Source: Bigelowiella natans CCMP2755
Lineage: Eukaryota > Protista > Cercozoa
Direction of reading: 5' to 3'
NCBI GenBank assembly: GCA_000320545.1
Contig: ADNK01000514.1
Location: forward strand, 1-34,688
Length of the DNA: 34,688 nucleotides
A program made the position numbers and the translations under genes. Positions 13,287 to 31,810 of this stretch are shown piece by piece. The notes under the pieces are model-generated. The model had not been told where the DNA came from and made no database searches. It was given only the letters and a program-made list of their open reading frames with translations. How positions within the stretch are numbered: the stretch's first letter is position 1; the number at the start of each line of letters is the position of its first letter.

Positions 13287-14214
13287 AACGGTTTTATTTT
13301 TGAGCTTCTGGTTGTCGGCGGGATCAGAGAAGGGGGATCGTATCGACTGTCAAAGACTGGGGTTCTTCTACACACTACAGGAGCTATATTTAGACATAAA
13401 ATATAAGATATTATACGGTACTTTGTCACTATCAATAGGGCGATCTGGATCGGACGGTACTCTGGTTGAGATGCTAACAGACATTTGCAAGTGAATGATC
13501 TAGGTGTTTCCCCCGTAGGAAAAAACTCTCTCCAGACGTTTCAGACGATTGTTTTAGTTTCTTTCTGTCTTTCTTCTTTCCACTTTCCAACACTCATTTC
13601 CTTCCTTCTTTGTGAGTGCACGTGGTCACTGCTTCCGTGCACCATTGCACTTTGGTGCTGTGCCCACGTGCATTCATTCATTCATTGCATCACATTGCGT
13701 GGCTTCTCATGATCAATGTCCCGCTGTTTCAGACACGAACAAATGAATCGATGAAAGGACAGAAAGAGGCACCTGCTGCCGATCCAGCTCCAGCTGCGCT
13801 GCCTGCAAGTCGTGCAGCGAGAAGGCCGGCAAGGGTATCTTCTGCTGTGCTTGCTGTCCTCAAGAACTGCAAGGACGATGTTTCTCCTTGGGGCGGCCAT
13901 TGGACGCGTTGCACAGCTGGTCTAGTGGTGCTAGCTTGTTGGCTCATTCGACAGCTTCGTTCATGCATCGCGGGGACAAACTAGTGCGTGAAGCCAATGC
14001 CACGCTAGCACGTTCACCATTTCCGGGTTTGCATGAATGTTGAAAAGTGTGGTCGTTTCATCGCATCCGTCTCTGTGTGCCAGCATGCAACGTTTGCAAC
14101 ACCACAAAAAACGTGGCGATTCAATCTGCTCTGCTGCGCATGCTCTTGACTGACCAAACAAACAATCAATGCAATCTTCGACAGGAACAATGACACCAAG
14201 AAGCTCCAGAGCTG

Positions 14215-14630
14215 ACCAAGCTAGCAAGCTCTCCAGCGTGGCTAGCTACGCTAGCTGCCAAGGAGCACATGCTAGCATGCCAACACGCTGCTCGCTTGCG
14301 CGCGTGCGTTGCTAGTTGCTAGCTAGCTCTAGAGCTAGGTCTACATGGGTCGCGGGCGTGGCGCAACAACGATGACAAAAATTGCTGACATTGATCAACA
14401 TGATGAAGCATGCAATCTAGCAATTCTGGAATAATAATTGCTAAACAAACAAACACAACGCTTTGACGCTGTGCTCGCCGCTTTCTAGCTTTGCACAGCT
14501 ACATTCTAGCATTCTAGCATTGCTAGATTGCTAGATTGGGATGCTCATTGAAAAAATTGTATTTGTTTCACCATGTCCGTTTCACAAGTGCCTGTCTAGC
14601 TGTGCTTGCTAGCTTGCCATGCTAGCATGA
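14215..14630. repeat. GCTA/CTAG-rich low-complexity intergenic tract
   Basis: Dense gctagc, ctagctag and gcatgc palindromic words are directly visible. Confidence 0.75.
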
Positions 14631-14719: not shown

Positions 14720-15206
14720 ATCTAGATGTGCATACATGTATAAGATTGTATACAGGTGTAAACAAATACATATGCAGGGTGTTCGTGTACGTGTCTTCGA
14801 GCATGTATTCACATGTATCTGCATTATCTTGAGATCGTGCAGTGATATTCAAATTTACAGATTTACAAGCGATCGATGCTCAGCTTGCTTGAGTCGCATC
14901 AGAGGGCTAGTATGATGCTTGCTCAAGACAGGCGTGAAATGATCGGACTTGCTGCTTCAACCATTAGGTCTATACTTCCATCACCCTCTACTATGTAAGG
15001 CGAATAACTTATCAATTATCTATGCGGAGCTTCGAATTTAGTGTACATGTACGTTACGAGAGTTGGAATGAAATTTCCACAGCTGCTCTTGCTTGGATCT
15101 CACCATGGGCCAGCTTGTGACGACTAAAACCTCGATGGATATCGATCCAAGCTCAGATATGCTTACTCCCGTGCGATATATGCTCCTGTTGCCGCCAGAA
15201 TGTGGC

Positions 15207-15278
15207 AGCGCCATTCCTCCAGCTTCTCATGTCCCCCTGCGGGGGTTTATATGCTAAGCCATCATAGGTAGTAACATC
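15207..15278 (-). promoter_or_regulatory. Type II SECIS element in the GPx 3' UTR
   Basis: Minus-strand RNA reads AUGAU-GGCUUAGCAUAU-AAA-CCCCC GCA GGGGG-ACAUGAGAAGCU-GGAG. It has a UGAU/GGAG quartet, a 12-nt helix II (GGCUU/AAGCU, CAU/AUG), apical AAA and a 5-bp mini-stem. Core at 15217-15265, about 195 nt after the GPx stop. Helix I is weak. Confidence 0.85.
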
Positions 15279-15459
15279 CAATTCGCACAGACTCACTATA
15301 ATTGATAGGTCGATTCATCTCTACATGAGAGGATGATAAGGCGTATAACCCAAGACTTCATTAGTTGAATTCCACGACGACAATCATCATCATAGATCCT
15401 TTTCGTTTGGTAAACCAAGACATATATGCATTGATATTATTGAGGTTTTCGAAGGCGCC

Positions 15460-15690
15460 TTAAGCTTTGAGAAGAGTTGCCACATCACCTTCGAGGTCAA
15501 GCGGTGCTTTCATTCCTGATAATTAGGGTAAAGAAATGGTTTGAGGGAAAAATAGTGCAGATGATTCTGGAATTGGGGGGAGATTCTGCTGCAGTGTACC
15601 GTCGTAGCGAGTTAAAGTCTTTCCTTCCTGTGAAAAGGGAGCAGTCAGTCCCCAGGATCAAATCGTACGAGGAGAAAAATGTGAAAATCA

Positions 15691-15729
<39 letters not shown>

Positions 15730-17098
15730 GGGGGGGGATGATATAGAATGTGTATCATGGTATGGATACATACTATTCTGATTATATATATACATATGTT
15801 ACTATTCTGATTATATATATATACATATATAAAACATATAATGTGTTTCGGCGACCTTGTCCACAAGAAACTTAGTAGCGAAGTTCCACATGATGTCACC
15901 TCCATCTCCCTTCAGTAACTTGTATACTGGGGAAGTTTGAGCACCGTTTACATCAATCTGCAACAAAAAACCGACAAGAATAAGGCAGGAGAGCAAATGC
16001 TACGAAGCAATGCTGTGGTTACAATATCATTATCATCATCATCATCATCATCATCACTGTCATCATTATCATCATAGCAGCTAAGCACCTTTTCCATCAT
16101 TGGAAATTGTACTCCGTATCCATTGACGAACTGTCTGATTTCAGACGGCGATCCAGGTTCTTGGGAACCTATCATTTTGATAATAAGAAGCGAGAAAATG
16201 AACGGACGAAATAAGTGAATTCGTTTGGTCAAGATCAGCAAGAACTTTCTGCTTCATCATCATGTCATGTCTGCGCTCCCAAATCACGACATCATAATGT
16301 ACCAAATTGATTAGATGGAAAGGCCAGAATTTCAAGGCCTTGGTCCTATAGAGAATAATCGCAGATCATAATGATGCAGCTATTATTCGTCTTATACTTT
16401 TCCCACCTTGTACTTCTCGTAAAGTGTCACAAGCTGTTTGTAGTTATTATCGGTCATACCTGTTGGTGGAAAAAGGACGTATAATAAGACGAAAATAACA
16501 TGTTGAAAGGGACGCAGGCAGTAGGAGCTAGTCGCACCTCATTTGGATGCCACATTTGTAATGAGAACAGTTTTGCCCTTCAGAGAATCGAACGAAAAAT
16601 CAGCGCCCTCCAGAGTCTTTGTCTTCAGCCCATAAAATTCCATCGGGGAAATATATCTGTAAGAATATATTACAGGTAAATGTTAGTTTCGATCGCTCAT
16701 CAACCACAATGGCCGTACACTACTTCCTACCTTGGTTTAGAACTCATTCCGAGCTTCTCCATGACACCGTCAAAAAATCCTTGTGCACAAACTTTTCTAC
16801 GAGAAGAAGCGTGAGTGGAAAGCATTCCTACTCCAGCAACTGGTGCAAACCTAGAAATAAGGTTCGTCACAACGTTGAAAGGATGAAGTTCTTTCTTATT
16901 TCACCGTGACTGCACGACCGGTGCTGCATGAGCCGCACTGCGCATAGCAAGTGGAGCATTGAGGCTAGCAGCGTTATCGCTTCGACCAAACGCGAATGTA
17001 AGCACACAACATGCGGCAGCTGAAATAGCAAGGACAAAGATAGCGGAAGATCCGCCACGCCGAGACCGACGAGACGTCAACAAAGGTGCCACAGCCAT
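15460..17098 (-). CDS. GPX: Selenocysteine-containing glutathione peroxidase with bipartite plastid-targeting leader (264 aa, 9 exons)
   Basis: Exons 17098-16905, 16850-16731, 16656-16538, 16459-16407, 16345-16303, 16168-16089, 15957-15856, 15627-15600, 15515-15460 total 795 nt, in frame. Motifs: LKGKTVLITNVASK-TGA(16539-16541)-G, LEILAFPSNQFGSQEPG, FPMMEKIDVNG, IMWNFATKFLVDK. A SECIS lies downstream. Confidence 0.95.
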
Positions 17099-18749
17099 TC
17101 TTGTGGAAAGTGGTTCTAATCGCTGATTTTTCAAAGCGACAGAGATTTTGGCCGAAAAATCGGTGAAATTGCACCCATTCTGGAAGAATATGCAGGTCGA
17201 ATCCAAACGATGCGGCCCGTTTGCAACTTCTTCCAAGCACTTGTCTGCATCTGCAGCAACAAAACTAGAAATGGACCTGAATCTGCAGAACAGAGCAACA
17301 GAATGATGGTTGCAGCAATGGGCTCTGATGTTGCCCAAGAACATCCTGACTTTGTTGCCACTCCAAAACCACGAGCACTCTTCAAGTGCCTCAAAATCCA
17401 CAGAACTTCCCCCCCTCCTGTTGCTTGGTTTTCTTCCTTGGAGTGCAACCAAGCGTCAAAAACACTTCACTCACTCGTTCACTCGTTCGTTCATTTGTCA
17501 ACAGTTCAGCTGTTGGAACGTGAACAATGAATCTTGTGGCCCCAGCTAGCCAGTGAGCGGCGTTGCAGGAGCGACCACTTCGATGTCGAGGGCTGCACGC
17601 ACAGTGAACGCTCCAGAGCTGCACGAGGAAAAACGTCAGTCTCAGCGGCGGAAGTGGGCAGCCAATTGAGGTTCAACCTCCATTGGCAAAACAAACTTTT
17701 GACTGACACGAATCCTTGCTGGCCTGCCTCGTTCCCAGCTGGCCGGGTCACGCGTCAACAGACGTCAGGAACGTCGAGGCTGAGGTCCTCGTGTGTGGCC
17801 TGCAAGCGACATCACACACTCACACTCTGGCACTCCACGCACGGGCGATTTGAAAAATGGTGAGAGGACAAGACTGGCAGAGTTCAATTTCACTTTTGAG
17901 TTTCCACGTTGAACTTGTTGTCAGCGTCAATTCAGGTGAACACATGGGTCCGCAATTTTGTCAGTCCACCGGTCTCTGAGTGTGCGCGAGAGCTAGAGAG
18001 AGTGAAAATTGCACAAAAATCGACACGCACAATGCTGGAATGAGAGGACGTGCGGGCGTTGCAACTTGGCGATCGCAATCGTCCCATGTGATCGATGTCA
18101 CCAGTCTGTGTGCCCACCTAGCTAGCTAGCCACGTTGTCACGCCCATGTGTGTCCATCGCTTTCACGTCAGGCAATCGAGTGCGACACGGCAAAAACTGT
18201 CGTCAAAACCACCCCGTCTGGTGTGGAAGCTCGACTCCTCGATTCGTCACACCACACAAGACTTTGTGTCCGTGGAGAAAGTTCTTACGGTGTCAGTGTG
18301 GTGCACAAACGTGAGCACTGTTGCAATGTTCAATTTTGTTCTCCAGTTCTGCATGCGATGCGCACACTCAACACGCAGTCAAGTGTGGCTGAACAGACGA
18401 ACGCGTTCGTTATGCGCACGTTGCACACAAGTTGTCTGCATCCACATGGACTAAACGTGCAGGCACATTGCCACCATTGCCACAGCATGACAGCTACATC
18501 AGGATGACAATTGAAGAAATTTGGTTCATTCATTGCATCTGTCCCACATGCTAGCATGGGTGTACACACAGATGTTACATTTGCAAGGAAGCATGCGATC
18601 GAGCGAGCGAGTATGTTGTGTTTTGTGCTTCATCATCATTATTGATTTGGAACCATGGCCCGTGCATGCACTGTCTACAGATTTTTTGGTTCCATCTGGA
18701 TGATCTGGATCCATGACTTGGACTACGTCCAGCCTTTTGTGACGTTGAA

Positions 18750-18845
18750 GAATGTCGAAGTGCTTTCCCGTCAATCAGCAACATCGATTCACGCAAGTAT
18801 ATGCGGATTTATCCGACATTGCATCAATGTAGCACCCTGTCATTC
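18750..18845 (-). promoter_or_regulatory. Type II SECIS element in the MsrA 3' UTR (UUGA core)
   Basis: Minus-strand RNA: helix I GGGUGCU/AGCACUU (extended by GAAUG/CAUUC), core U-UGAU/UGAU, helix II GCAAUGUCG(G)AU/AUCGAUGUUGC (11 bp), apical AAA, mini-stem CGCA/UGCG. Core at 18774-18827, about 58 nt after the stop. Confidence 0.88.
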
Positions 18846-18884
18846 CAATGTCTCCGAAGGCTAAATCAATTGGGCTGAATCACT

Positions 18885-19376
18885 TTAGGCACGACCAGCC
18901 TTTTCGAAGTACTTCTGATGATACTCTTCAGCGTAGTAGAAATCCCCTAGAGGGGCTATTTCCGTGTAAACTTTTCCATCTCTTTTACCTCTTTTTTCAA
19001 GCTCAGCTACTTTCTTAGCAAGGACTTCTTTTTGTTCCTCGTTCTGATACCATGCTCCTGACATGTACTGCCTGCAGTATGGCTTCGAGCGAAACGAATG
19101 CTCCGAGAAGAAAATGTCTACAATTTTGCTGTAGCTAACCTTAGCTGGATCAAAGGTGATTTGAATAACTTCTGTATGATCTCCGAGCGAATGATAAGTC
19201 GGATTCTTCTTCTTCCCTCCCGCATAACCAACGCGCGTACTCAGAACGCCGGGAACGTTCTTAGGCGCGAAGGTAACTTCTGGCCCCCAAAATCAGCCCA
19301 TACCGAAGGTTGCAGTGTTGGCCGGGGTTTCCATCAGCGGACATTTCGTCGCTTTCTTCTCAAGCTTGGATCCCAT
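18885..19376 (-). CDS. msrA: Selenocysteine-containing peptide methionine-S-sulfoxide reductase A (163 aa from this ATG, no intron in this span)
   Basis: 492-nt frame MGSKLEKK...TATFGMG-TGA(19293-19295)-FWGPE...VLSTRVGYAGG...NPTYHSLGDHTEVIQITFDPAKVSY...RQYMS...VYTEIAPLGDFYYAEEYHQKY...*. TGA sits exactly at the catalytic Cys of GCFWG. Absent from the ORF track. The frame stays open upstream to an acceptor-like ttttgcacag, so a longer N-terminus is possible. Confidence 0.95.
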
Positions 19377-19724
19377 GAGAATGAGATTTGTGGCGAATGG
19401 ATTCTGGTAACCTGTTCCTTTCAGAGGCACAGCACGAGTGGTCTGTGCAAAAAAACCCGCAAGCACGATTTTTCGTTCAAGATTCCGGTTAATTTCGTCA
19501 TTGTGACATATAATTATTGCTGTCGCATGTGATAAACACAGAACTTCCTTTGGCGAAGGTAAAGGAAGCAGAAGGGAGAGTGGTGGTCAACAAGGCGCTT
19601 TTGCCTAAAACTGGCTTGACGTCCGGTGGTCTATTTTTAGAGCATTTGACTGAGAAGTGCGAGTTTCCACTTTCCTGCTGCCGAAAAATTAGACGCGATT
19701 CCATCGCCAGTATACCCAACAACA

Positions 19725-30314: not shown

Positions 30315-30729
30315 CGGCAGTCTGTCTCCCTTTTCTACTCCTTTTTATCCCTATGCCTTTGATTGTCTCGTAGGAGAGGCTGTTACCCTCCCCCTCGCCG
30401 CTCAGTGCGACAGAATTTTCAATTTAATTTTCGAATTCGTAAGCCGACTTTTTTAGGTAGAAAAATGTGGAAAATAAAAAAGCGGAAATCCTAGGAAATC
30501 CATTTGGAAAACCCATGAAACCTCACATTCTTGTGTGGAATGGCCTGCAAAGCCGCTGTGCTCAACTTGATTCGGGTGCGGTCGGCTCAAGCAAGTGTCT
30601 TGCAACACTTTGGAAATGTAGTTTTTCATCATTGTTTCATTGTTTCAAGCGCTGCTGGCAGGCGGATGTGAAACAAAACCTCGATTTCTTTGGTTGCTGT
30701 TGACCTTGATTGACGAGGACATGGATGAG

Positions 30730-31810
30730 TCAGCATGCTAGCATGCTAGCATGTCCCGTGATCCTTCCGAATCAAGCTTCACTCATTCGTTTTGGTGTTC
30801 ACTCACTCCATCTAGCTAGCTAGTCAGCACTCTGGCACCCACCACCTTCCTTTCTTGCTGGCTAGCCAACTAGCTGCAGCTTGGTGCAGGTTTCTTCGAT
30901 GCTAGGACAGTCAGCTAGTCAGGCTAGCAGGATTGAAACAAAAATGAATTCTGGAATTCCATTGTTGGTGTGCGTGCAGTCTTGCAGTCCTAGAGTCGAG
31001 CAGTGCTCGCATGCTGGCATGCTTGCTGGCATGCTAGCATGGCTAGATGGCCATGGCTGCTAGATGGCATCGTCACCAGCTAGCCAGCAAGTCAAGCTCT
31101 GCTGGTCTGGAAATACGGTGCTCGTTCTGGCATTCTAGCAGCATTGCTGGATTGCTTGTGTTGAGCTCATTGCTAGCTAGCTCGTTCTAGAGCTAGAGCT
31201 CCTCCAGCTAGCTAGCGCAGCTAGTAGACGACGCGAGTTCACTGTCTAGCTAGACATCTGTGCTAGCTGTGGCCAGTCTAGCAGTCAGCAGTGAGTCTAG
31301 CTAGCTAGGAGTGCTAGAGCTAGAGAGTTGCAAAGAGGCGACAAGCTTCTAGACTAGAAGAGCTTTATCTTGTTCTAGAGTTGCATTGTCTAGTTGTGCG
31401 TGCACACCTAGCTAGCTAGACACGCTAGCACGCCAGCTAGCCAGCATGCGCTCACGCTCGTTCCAGCTAGCTAGCCTGCTAGCCTGGCTAGCTGGCTAGC
31501 TGGCAGACAGAGCTAATGACTAGCTAGAGAGCTAACTAGCTAACGAGAACTACTAGCTCTAGAGCTAGCTAGAGAAGAAGGTGTCGTCTGCCTAGCTAGA
31601 CTAGTACACACAATGTACCAGAAGGAATGCGCATGCTGTAGTAAGCATCGCTAGATCGTGCTAGCTAGCTAGTCTAGCAGTGGCTGCCATGCTAGCATGC
31701 CAGCAGCCACGTTCCCTTAGTCCTCTTGCTCAAACACGTAGTGCTAGAGTGCAGGCAAGCACGTACAAAATGGGCTTCTATTCTAGCTAGCTAGCTAGCT
31801 AGTGCAACGT
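30730..31810. repeat. Long GCTA/CTAG-rich low-complexity intergenic tract
   Basis: Very dense gctagctagc and catgctagcatg words are directly visible. Confidence 0.85.

What the first reader, a model, noticed from the sequence alone, without database searches (positions are those of the whole stretch)
15207..19376. Two adjacent, co-oriented selenoprotein genes (Sec-MsrA then Sec-GPx), each with its own SECIS
Seen: both neighbouring minus-strand genes carry TGA exactly at the catalytic residue (GMG-U-FWG; NVASK-U-G), and each 3' UTR folds into a type II SECIS. Known: Sec-MsrA and Sec-GPx each occur in algae, but eukaryotic selenoprotein genes of unrelated families are usually scattered. Inference: this could be a clustered selenium-dependent antioxidant module (peroxide removal plus methionine sulfoxide repair). 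Automated annotation would truncate or miss both genes.
Basis: partly seen in the sequence, partly recalled or inferred. Interest (0 to 1): 0.85.

Follow-up and report, generated by a model that had tools for sequence, protein, structure and literature searches.

The report
Two neighbouring algal selenoprotein genes
Two neighbouring but separately transcribed genes of the marine alga Bigelowiella natans really do encode selenium-containing forms of a methionine-sulfoxide reductase and a glutathione peroxidase, but both belong to well-known algal selenoprotein families, and no test here showed their adjacency to be more than coincidence.

Summary
On the minus strand lies an intronless MsrA gene (19376..18885) with TGA at GMG-U-FWG. 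About 1.8 kb downstream lies a nine-exon GPx4-type GPx gene (17098..15460) with TGA at NVASK-U-G. Transcript contigs from three studies carry both TGAs unchanged and confirm all eight GPx introns. Each 3' UTR holds one type II SECIS. The GPx element is canonical (AUGA). The MsrA element starts UUGA, and two orthologues keep the same helix register through compensatory changes. The genome (B. natans CCMP2755) has tRNA-Sec, SepSecS and SelD.

The "antioxidant module" reading is not supported:
- The two mRNAs are separate: MsrA has its own poly(A) site and read depth falls to zero between the genes.
- A TpA-depleted spacer of a class this scan reports across the genome lies between them.
- GPx has a roughly 100-residue signal-plus-transit-like N-terminus, and MsrA has none.
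- The one relative with a long enough contig has no GPx within 8 kb of its Sec-MsrA.
- Random placement gives an adjacent selenoprotein pair with probability about 0.02-0.16.

Jiang et al. 2020 catalogued 23 B. natans selenoprotein genes and list the species among algae with selenoprotein gene clusters. This scan had already noted the MsrA on this window, and many other selenoprotein genes elsewhere in this genome.

Verdict: real, but ordinary and largely known.

The parts
18612..19391 (-). MsrA mRNA as seen in transcript contigs (5' end at or beyond 19391; poly(A) added at about 18612-18616)
   Evidence: contigs X5 18682-19390, X6 18612-19391 and X1 18524-19354; poly-T loose ends before 18612 and 18616 on the + strand.
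18885..19376 (-). Intronless Sec-MsrA coding sequence (163 codons plus TAA stop)
   Evidence: PMSR domain; the closest solved chains are the MsrA set headed by 4w8c/4lwj/4u66/7c13, matched from chain residue 17.
19293..19295 (-). Sec codon TGA of MsrA (GMG-U-FWG)
   Evidence: The same TGA is kept in orthologues L001 and L106. It aligns with TGT/TGC in 41 metagenome relatives and with TGA in 5. It is unchanged in the transcripts.
18758..18837 (-). MsrA type II SECIS: helix I, UUGA...GA core (18827..18775), 11-position helix II, AUAAA internal loop and an apical mini-stem
   Evidence: It starts 58 nt after the stop, as in orthologue L105. Helix II keeps its register in L001 and L105, with changes on both sides of several pairs.
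17190..18286 (.). TpA-depleted intergenic spacer between the MsrA 3' end and the GPx 5' end (6 TA where 62 are expected, all inside CTAG)
   Evidence: unique in the genome; low-depth contigs cover 17247-18079; scan notes report the same class of spacer across this genome.
16905..17098 (-). GPx exon 1: proposed ATG at 17098..17096, with a hydrophobic signal-like segment followed by an Ala/Ser/Arg-rich stretch
   Evidence: The exon is spliced to exon 2 in all three assemblies, but the contigs stop at 17095, 17089 and 17088, so the ATG itself is not covered.
16731..16850 (-). GPx exon 2 (the rest of the N-terminal extension)
   Evidence: joints 16848/16903 and 16656/16731.
16538..16656 (-). GPx exon 3, with the Sec codon TGA at 16541..16539 (NVASK-U-G); the intron starts one base after the codon
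16407..16459 (-). GPx exon 4
   Evidence: joints; translation.
16303..16345 (-). GPx exon 5 (FPSNQF motif)
   Evidence: joints.
16089..16168 (-). GPx exon 6 (catalytic Gln in G-SQEPG; best solved matches are GPX4)
15856..15957 (-). GPx exon 7 (catalytic Trp and Asn in MWNFATKFLV; no subunit-interface loop)
15600..15627 (-). GPx exon 8
   Evidence: joints.
15460..15515 (-). GPx exon 9, coding part, with TAA stop at 15462..15460
14900..15459 (-). GPx 3' UTR. It continues below 14900, to about 14821 judging from contig length
   Evidence: X1 record 1 maps 14900-15514 at record positions 738-1352 of 1431; the 3'-biased raw reads peak at 14900-15060.
15207..15279 (-). GPx type II SECIS: AUGA...GA core (15265..15218), AAA internal loop, and a CCCCC/GGGGG apical mini-stem
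   Evidence: it starts 195 nt after the stop.

Best explanation
These are two independent nuclear selenoprotein genes of Bigelowiella natans that happen to be neighbours.

The upstream gene encodes a short, probably cytosolic MsrA. Its catalytic residue is selenocysteine, which attacks methionine-S-sulfoxide. It belongs to the short MsrA subtype that is also found as natural selenoproteins in Chlamydomonas and Clostridium oremlandii.

The downstream gene encodes a GPx4/PHGPx-type glutathione peroxidase with the full U/Q/W/N catalytic tetrad. It has an N-terminal extension of about 100 residues that looks like a chlorarachniophyte signal peptide plus transit peptide, so it probably works in the plastid or the secretory route.

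Each mRNA has its own poly(A) tail and its own type II SECIS hairpin in the 3' UTR. The hairpin recruits the Sec-insertion machinery so that the single in-frame UGA is read as Sec.

Shown here: the gene structures, expression, splicing, presence of both TGAs in mature mRNA, the SECIS-shaped elements, and tRNA-Sec, SepSecS and SelD in the genome. Inferred: actual Sec insertion, the targeting of GPx, and that the adjacency is neutral rather than selected.
For: - Domains and the TGA positions.
- TGA conserved with flanking sequence in MsrA orthologues (L001, L106), and aligned with Cys codons elsewhere.
- Other Sec-GPx paralogues in the same genome (NVATL-U-G, NVASK-U-G).
- Transcript contigs from three studies with all eight introns removed, both TGAs unchanged, a poly(A) tail on MsrA, and zero depth between the genes.
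- SECIS: the only two compact stable candidates on either strand of the window fall in the two 3' UTRs. The MsrA SECIS has the same position and helix register in L001 and L105, with compensatory changes.
- Machinery: tRNA-Sec at 68.5 bits with anticodon TCA, SepSecS exons, SelD exons.
- Closest solved structures: the MsrA chains headed by 4w8c/4lwj/4u66/7c13, matched from residue 17; from my own knowledge these are the Clostridium oremlandii enzyme, whose residue 16 is Sec in nature. For GPx: GPX4, yeast HYR1 and poplar GPX5.
- Against a module: no GPx near the MsrA of L001 or of 80 other loci, unrelated neighbouring genes, and an N-terminal extension on GPx only.
Against: - No protein-level evidence of Sec insertion.
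- The MsrA SECIS has U instead of A or G before the UGA of the core, and Rfam finds neither SECIS.
- EFsec was not identified: the bacterial selB model hit only EF-Tu. SBP2 was not searched, and PSTK gave no hit.
- The GPx start codon is not covered by the transcript contigs, so the targeting extension is inferred.
- Random placement of 23-60 selenoprotein genes among 21,708 genes gives only 0.02-0.16 expected adjacent pairs, so chance is plausible but not comfortable.
- Algal Sec-MsrA genes are reported to be linked or fused with other selenoprotein genes more often than most families (PMC7539508).
- Conservation of the adjacency could be tested in only one relative of unknown identity.
Confidence: 0.8

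Rival explanations
1. The adjacency is functional. The two genes form a co-regulated, selenium-dependent antioxidant pair that shares a chromatin domain or regulatory elements, so that peroxide removal and methionine-sulfoxide repair rise and fall together.
For: - The genes are co-oriented and 1.8 kb apart, and both assemble at high contig depth in all three RNA assemblies.
- The chance expectation of an adjacent selenoprotein pair is low (about 0.02-0.16).
- A 12-mer is shared by both upstream regions; 4 of 200 shuffles gave a match at least as long.
- Jiang et al. 2020 report MSRA among the families found most often in algal selenoprotein clusters, and a GST-MSRA fusion in Emiliania.
Against: - The mRNAs are separate, with a poly(A) site and a zero-depth gap between them.
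- A TpA-depleted spacer, of the kind the scan notes place downstream of genes across this genome, separates them.
- The MsrA/GPx contig depth ratio varies from 1.4 to 3.8 across three runs (a poor measure).
- Their predicted compartments differ.
- The adjacency is absent from L001 and from 80 other MsrA loci.
- Jiang et al. found only one algal selenoprotein cluster conserved across species, SELENOF-PDI_a.
Confidence: 0.12
2. One or both TGAs are ordinary stop codons, so the gene is a truncated gene or a pseudogene and the hairpins are chance structures.
For: Rfam reports no SECIS. The folding z-scores are unremarkable. The MsrA core is non-canonical (UUGA).
Against: - The protein domain continues in frame after each TGA, with the catalytic motifs intact.
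- The TGA and its flanks are conserved in orthologues.
- The transcripts are abundant and fully spliced.
- The SECIS shows compensatory changes across orthologues.
- tRNA-Sec, SepSecS and SelD are present.
- A truncated MsrA would be 27 residues long.
Confidence: 0.02
3. The MsrA gene is a selenoprotein gene, but the UUGA hairpin at 18827..18775 is not its working SECIS; another element serves instead.
For: In the literature I could search, A or G precedes the UGA of the SECIS core (AUGA_AA and GUGA_AA patterns, PMC3473315). I found no paper that mentions UUGA.
Against: - It is the only SECIS-shaped candidate in the 273-nt 3' UTR.
- It sits 58 nt after the stop, exactly as in L105.
- Orthologues have A (L001) and G (L105) at that position, while the UGA/GA, the 11-position helix II, the AAA loop and the mini-stem are all kept.
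Confidence: 0.06

Closest known systems
Selenoprotein MsrA of Chlamydomonas reinhardtii and other algae (MSRA family in Jiang et al. 2020, PMC7539508)
   Same: A eukaryotic MsrA with Sec in the G-U-FWG catalytic motif, read from UGA with a 3'-UTR SECIS. MSRA is listed among the most widely distributed algal Sec proteins.
   Different: This copy is from a rhizarian (chlorarachniophyte) alga. Its SECIS starts UUGA. It and its two closest eukaryotic relatives share a conserved Cys (KCPL) 16 residues before the Sec.
Solved MsrA chains 4w8c, 4lwj-4lwm, 4u66 and 7c13; from my own knowledge, the natural Sec16 MsrA of Clostridium (Alkaliphilus) oremlandii
   Same: These are the best sequence matches among solved structures (E about 1e-30). 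The alignment starts at chain residue 17, immediately after the position that my own knowledge places as the Sec/Cys site. Same short FWGP subtype.
   Different: The bacterial enzyme uses a bacterial SECIS inside the coding region, and most of these chains carry a C-terminal extension (about 210 residues, against 163 here).
GPX4 / PHGPx-type selenocysteine glutathione peroxidases
   Same: NVASK-U-G active site, Gln in GxQEPG, and Trp and Asn in WNF. The short segment between exons 6 and 7 has no oligomerisation loop. Exon 6 best matches GPX4 chains.
   Different: It has an N-terminal extension of about 100 residues with a hydrophobic signal-like segment. It is one of at least four Sec-GPx genes in this genome.
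Algal selenoprotein gene clusters (Jiang et al. 2020, Fig. 4a and Fig. S8)
   Same: Physically adjacent selenoprotein genes of different families in an alga. B. natans is named among the species with such clusters, and MSRA is among the families found most often in them.
   Different: The figures are images that I could not read, so I cannot say whether this MSRA-GPX pair is the published B. natans cluster. Only SELENOF-PDI_a was reported as conserved across species.
Type II eukaryotic SECIS element
   Same: UGA/GA sheared-pair core, a helix II of about 11 positions, unpaired AAA in an internal loop, and an extra apical mini-stem, in both genes.
   Different: The base before the UGA is U in the MsrA element. 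The papers I read describe A or G there.

Membership tests
Eukaryotic selenoprotein gene (both genes) | In-frame UGA at a position that is Cys or Sec in homologues, with conserved coding sequence on both sides | tested here: met
Eukaryotic selenoprotein gene (both genes) | SECIS element in the 3' UTR of the mature mRNA | tested here: met
   Both hairpins lie inside the transcribed 3' UTRs. Pattern and fold. Compensatory changes for MsrA. Rfam is blank.
Eukaryotic selenoprotein gene (both genes) | The genome encodes tRNA-Sec and the Sec synthesis enzymes | tested here: met
   tRNA-Sec at 68.5 bits with anticodon TCA; SepSecS exons, about 327 bits summed; SelD exons. PSTK gave no hit with the archaeal-type model.
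Eukaryotic selenoprotein gene (both genes) | EFsec and SBP2 are present | tested here: inconclusive
   The best hit of the bacterial selB model is an organellar EF-Tu. SBP2 was not searched, because no specific model was at hand.
Eukaryotic selenoprotein gene (both genes) | Selenium is actually incorporated at the UGA | not testable with these tools
   Needs 75Se labelling or mass spectrometry.
MsrA (Pfam PF01625) | PMSR domain with the catalytic G-[C/U]-F-W-G motif at its N-terminus | tested here: met
   3.6e-35 for the piece after the U; 132 bits over profile positions 1-148 when read through.
Glutathione peroxidase (Pfam PF00255), GPX4-like | GSHPx domain with the catalytic tetrad Sec/Cys, Gln, Trp, Asn | tested here: met
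   Exon-by-exon matches. U is in exon 3, Q in exon 6, and W and N in exon 7. The joined protein was not searched.
Glutathione peroxidase (Pfam PF00255), GPX4-like | Monomeric type: no subunit-interface loop, and no resolving Cys of the thioredoxin-dependent plant and yeast type | tested here: inconclusive
   Exon 6 aligns best with GPX4, and the stretch FVNGYG contains no Cys. Exon 7 aligns with poplar GPX5 and yeast HYR1 with small gaps. No full-length alignment or fold was made.
Type II SECIS | AUGA (or GUGA) ... GA core, unpaired AA at 10-13 nt, and an extra apical helix | tested here: met
   The GPx element meets all features.
Type II SECIS | The same features for the MsrA element | tested here: inconclusive
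   All features are met except the base before the UGA, which is U. Orthologues have A and G at that position.
Functional gene cluster / module | Adjacency conserved in related genomes | tested here: not met
   No GPx within 8 kb of the Sec-MsrA of L001, and none in 80 metagenome MsrA loci totalling 645 kb. No second chlorarachniophyte genome was within reach.
Functional gene cluster / module | Co-transcription or demonstrated co-regulation | tested here: not met
   Co-transcription is excluded by the poly(A) site and the zero-depth gap. Co-regulation could not be tested.

The most novel reading that the evidence does not exclude
The MsrA-GPx adjacency is selected. It would be one case of a recurrent tendency of algal Sec-MsrA genes to be physically linked with other selenoprotein genes (Rhod-MSRA, the GST-MSRA fusion, and here GPX-MSRA), giving coordinated selenium- or oxidant-responsive expression. 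As a side point, the MsrA element would show that a SECIS with U before the core UGA works in vivo.
Probability: 0.1. Interest if true: 0.45.

Novelty: already known. Interest (0 to 1): 0.2.

Why it matters
The finding mainly serves annotation. Both genes are real and expressed, and callers that treat TGA as a stop truncate them. The exact exon, Sec-codon, SECIS and poly(A) coordinates given here can repair the gene models.

Biologically, Sec-MsrA and Sec-GPx are standard members of large marine algal selenoproteomes, and selenoprotein gene clusters in algae, including in this species, have been published. The pair therefore opens no new question.

Three small points may interest specialists:
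- a SECIS with U before the core UGA, supported by compensatory changes in orthologues;
- a conserved N-terminal Cys (KCPL) in the eukaryotic Sec-MsrA relatives, a candidate resolving residue;
- a probable organelle-targeted Sec-GPx.

Tried and rejected
- **Rfam**, at gathering and at E<=10: no SECIS family hit for either element. Only chance snoRNA-like hits in repeats, and one SNORD88-like hit below threshold. I treat the blank as insensitivity, because the fully canonical GPx SECIS is missed too.
- **RNAalifold** on a MAFFT alignment of the three MsrA SECIS: the alignment was not structure-aware and predicted no pairs. I replaced it with a register-based pair table.
- **Bacterial selB model for EFsec**: the top hit is EF-Tu, so EFsec is unresolved. 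The PSTK model gave no hit.
- **Metagenome scan for MsrA relatives**: almost all hits are bacterial-like at 40-45% identity, and useless for eukaryotic synteny.
- **Raw RNA reads of X21**: these are 3'-biased 60-nt tags. They gave poly(A) sites, but almost no depth at the TGAs or splice sites. Those rest on assembled contigs, which can hide rare variants.
- **Shared promoter motifs**: one 12-mer (4 of 200 shuffles as long or longer) and one inverted 10-mer (21 of 200 shuffles), both at different distances from the two ATGs. Not convincing.
- **The TpA-free block as a repeat or mobile element**: rejected, as it is unique in the genome.
- The joined sequence was never built for, or sent to, any search or fold.
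Full report
**What is there**

On the minus strand, an ATG at 19376 opens a 163-codon frame that ends at TAA 18887..18885. Its only interruption is a TGA at 19295..19293, inside ...TATFGMG*FWGPEV.... The 135 residues after the TGA match Pfam PMSR (PF01625) at 3.6e-35, starting at profile position 9, right after the catalytic G-C-F-W position. Read through, the match covers profile positions 1-148 with one TGA.

About 1.8 kb downstream on the same strand lies a nine-exon gene: 17098-16905, 16850-16731, 16656-16538, 16459-16407, 16345-16303, 16168-16089, 15957-15856, 15627-15600 and 15515-15460. Its third exon ends ...VLITNVASK-TGA-G, followed by a GT intron. That exon matches Pfam GSHPx positions 1-32, or 1-39 across the TGA. 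Later exons carry FPSNQF, G-SQEPG and MWNFATKFLV, which complete the Sec/Gln/Trp/Asn tetrad. The joined protein was not built for any search.

**Which organism**

The assembly has 91,405,885 bases in 3,736 contigs. These are exactly the figures published for Bigelowiella natans CCMP2755: 91.4 Mb, 3,736 contigs and 45% GC (Table 1 of PMC12730881), with records ADNK01000001-ADNK01003736 (PMC7539508 Table S1). Earlier notes of this scan name the same alga. The window is the whole of contig 3223.

**Expression, splicing and the TGAs in mRNA**

I laid Logan contigs from three different studies (X1, X5, X6) and one raw RNA-seq run (X21) on 14900-19700.

- All eight GPx introns are removed exactly at the predicted GT..AG sites in all three assemblies.
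- No base difference is reported at either TGA.
- The MsrA contigs run from 19391 to 18612. They end in poly(A), and 18 raw reads show the same tail at 18616.
- The GPx mRNA runs from about 17095 to below 14900. Contig length puts its end near 14821, and the 3'-biased raw reads peak at 14900-15060.
- Depth is zero in every run over 18120-18441, so these are two separate mRNAs.
- One caveat: the GPx contigs stop at 17095, 17089 and 17088, that is 1-8 nt short of covering the proposed ATG at 17098..17096. The X1 MsrA contig likewise stops 22 nt inside its coding sequence. I therefore read this as assembly truncation, but the GPx start codon is inferred.

**SECIS elements**

Rfam finds nothing, either at gathering threshold or at E<=10. 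My own scans and folds give one candidate per 3' UTR.

- **GPx**: core 15265..15218. AUGA, then 13 nt of helix II with a small internal loop, unpaired AAA, a CCCCC/GGGGG mini-stem, and GA on the 3' side. Helix I extends the element to 15279..15207. It starts 195 nt after the stop.
- **MsrA**: core 18827..18775. UUGA, a helix II of 11 positions, AUAAA, a mini-stem, and GA. Helix I extends it to 18837..18758. It starts 58 nt after the stop.

Folding energies alone are not unusual (z = -0.13 and -1.46), so I tested specificity another way. A relaxed scan of both strands of the whole window gave seven candidates at -15 kcal/mol or better. Only these two have an inner length under 60 nt, and both sit in the two 3' UTRs, which are 912 of 69,376 strand-bases. 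By chance about 0.09 of the seven would fall there.

For MsrA there is also comparative support. The orthologue on metagenome scaffold L001 keeps ...KCPLLETPANTATFGMG*FWGPEVTF. It has one SECIS candidate with AUGA. The closer relative L105 has one with GUGA, also 58 nt after the stop. In all three the helix II register is the same, and pairs at positions 4-11 change on both sides, for example G-U, U-A and C-G at position 7. The base before the UGA is therefore free to vary (A, G or U), while the rest is conserved. GUGA cores are known from green algae and sponges (PMC3473315). I found no paper mentioning UUGA.

**Sec machinery**

- The genome has a tRNA-Sec (68.5 bits against a cut-off of 47, anticodon TCA).
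- It has colinear exons of SepSecS and SelD.
- EFsec was not resolved: the bacterial selB model hit only EF-Tu.
- PSTK gave no hit, and SBP2 was not searched.
- The genome holds at least three more GPx loci with a TGA; for two of them the motif scan places it at the catalytic site. It also holds Cys-type MsrA paralogues.

**What kind of enzymes**

The MsrA piece matches best the solved MsrA chains headed by 4w8c, 4lwj, 4u66 and 7c13 (E about 1e-30), from chain residue 17. From my own knowledge, these are the Clostridium oremlandii enzyme, whose residue 16 is Sec in nature. Among 80 metagenome relatives, the aligned codon is TGT or TGC in 41 and TGA in 5.

The GPx exons match GPX4 best for exon 6, and yeast HYR1 and poplar GPX5 for exons 3 and 7. 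This points to a monomeric PHGPx-like enzyme.

MsrA has only 27 residues before the Sec. GPx has about 105 residues before the domain. They contain a strongly hydrophobic segment (Kyte-Doolittle peak 2.7), followed by a stretch rich in Ala, Ser and Arg, with 11 Lys/Arg against 3 Asp/Glu. From general knowledge of chlorarachniophyte bipartite presequences, this suggests plastid or periplastid targeting. That is inference.

**Is it a module?**

Every test I could run failed to support a module.

1. The mRNAs are separate.
2. Between them lies a 1,097-nt block (17190-18286) with 6 TpA where 62 are expected, all inside CTAG. It is unique in the genome. Other notes of this scan describe this class of spacer across the genome, downstream of genes. 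So an ordinary spacer separates the two genes.
3. The other recognisable genes on the contig are unrelated: GNT-I, SprT/HMG, and weak PAN-domain and CCDC39-like matches.
4. The predicted compartments differ.
5. L001, the only relative with flanking DNA, has no GPx within 8 kb on either side of its Sec-MsrA. None of 80 other MsrA loci, 645 kb in total, has one either.
6. With G = 21,708 genes and N = 23 selenoprotein genes (PMC7539508), the expected number of adjacent pairs is N(N-1)/G = 0.02. With N up to about 60, allowing for the many further candidates this scan has noted, it is about 0.16. Chance is therefore plausible, though not comfortable.

**What is already known**

Jiang et al. 2020 (PMC7539508) made four relevant points:
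- they catalogued the B. natans selenoproteome;
- they state that MSRA and GPX are among the most widespread algal Sec proteins;
- they analysed selenoprotein gene clusters and name B. natans among the species shown in their cluster figure;
- they note that MSRA is one of the families found most often in clusters, and that only SELENOF-PDI_a is conserved across species.

The figures are images that I could not read, so I cannot confirm that this exact pair is theirs. This scan had already noted the MsrA on this window (s1-763329), and many other selenoprotein genes elsewhere in this genome. It held no note of another adjacent pair.

**Verdict**

The 'two selenoprotein genes, each with its own SECIS' reading is supported. 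The 'antioxidant module' reading is not. The finding is real but ordinary, and its kind is already published.

Noticed in passing
window 17190-18286 (also 30619-31114 and 13555-14247): A 1,097-nt intergenic block has only 6 TpA where 62 are expected, all inside CTAG, with TG and CA in excess (1.5x). It is unique in the genome. Low-depth contigs (about 10-24x) cover 17247-18079. Smaller TpA-free blocks occur elsewhere in the window. Other scan notes treat this as a class of spacer found across the genome.
   Followed up: partly
window 19341-19343 (Cys of KCPL); L001 and L106 orthologues: A Cys in a KCPL motif 16 residues before the Sec is kept in all three eukaryotic Sec-MsrA sequences I could read (B. 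natans, L001, L106). It is absent from the longer relative P0004. It may be a resolving residue for the selenenic acid intermediate.
   Followed up: no
window 18827: The base before the UGA of the MsrA SECIS core is U. The orthologues have A (L001) and G (L105). The papers I read describe only A or G at this position.
   Followed up: partly
G000 contigs C1529, C3163, C2359 (L017-L019, L022): Three more GPx loci carry a TGA. For two the motif scan shows it at the catalytic site (NVATL-U-GTT on C1529, NVASK-U-GYT on C3163). The C3163 gene has an AUGA type II SECIS candidate at L019:2112-2158. The locus on C209 shows no TGA in its first exon match.
   Followed up: partly
G000 contigs C1632 and C2140 (L012, L015): MsrA paralogues have Cys at the catalytic site (GSCFW, AGCFW). 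The gene in this window is therefore the only Sec-type MsrA found in the genome.
   Followed up: partly
L024, L038, L060, L065, L066: Five metagenome MsrA loci have TGA at the catalytic position (ATFALG*FWGPD and AVFALG*FWGPE). I did not determine whether they are bacterial or eukaryotic.
   Followed up: no
window 15040, 15067, 15376: One RNA assembly (X5, a 2015 study) differs from the genome at three places in the GPx 3' UTR (A>G, A>C, G>A). None lies in the SECIS or at the TGA. These are probably strain or culture variants.
   Followed up: no
window 17295-17358 (+): A weak SNORD88-like C/D-box match (22.4 bits, gathering score 46, E = 0.17) lies inside the TpA-depleted block. It is probably chance.
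   Followed up: no
window 19537-19548 and 17399-17410 (minus strand): The same 12-mer (GGAAGTTCTGTG) lies upstream of both genes, 160 nt before the MsrA ATG and 300 nt before the GPx ATG. Four of 200 shuffles gave a match at least as long.
   Followed up: partly
window 17651: A low-depth contig (X1, 17270-17651) continues for 28 letters that do not match the window. This may be a splice to a distant exon or a chimeric contig.
   Followed up: no
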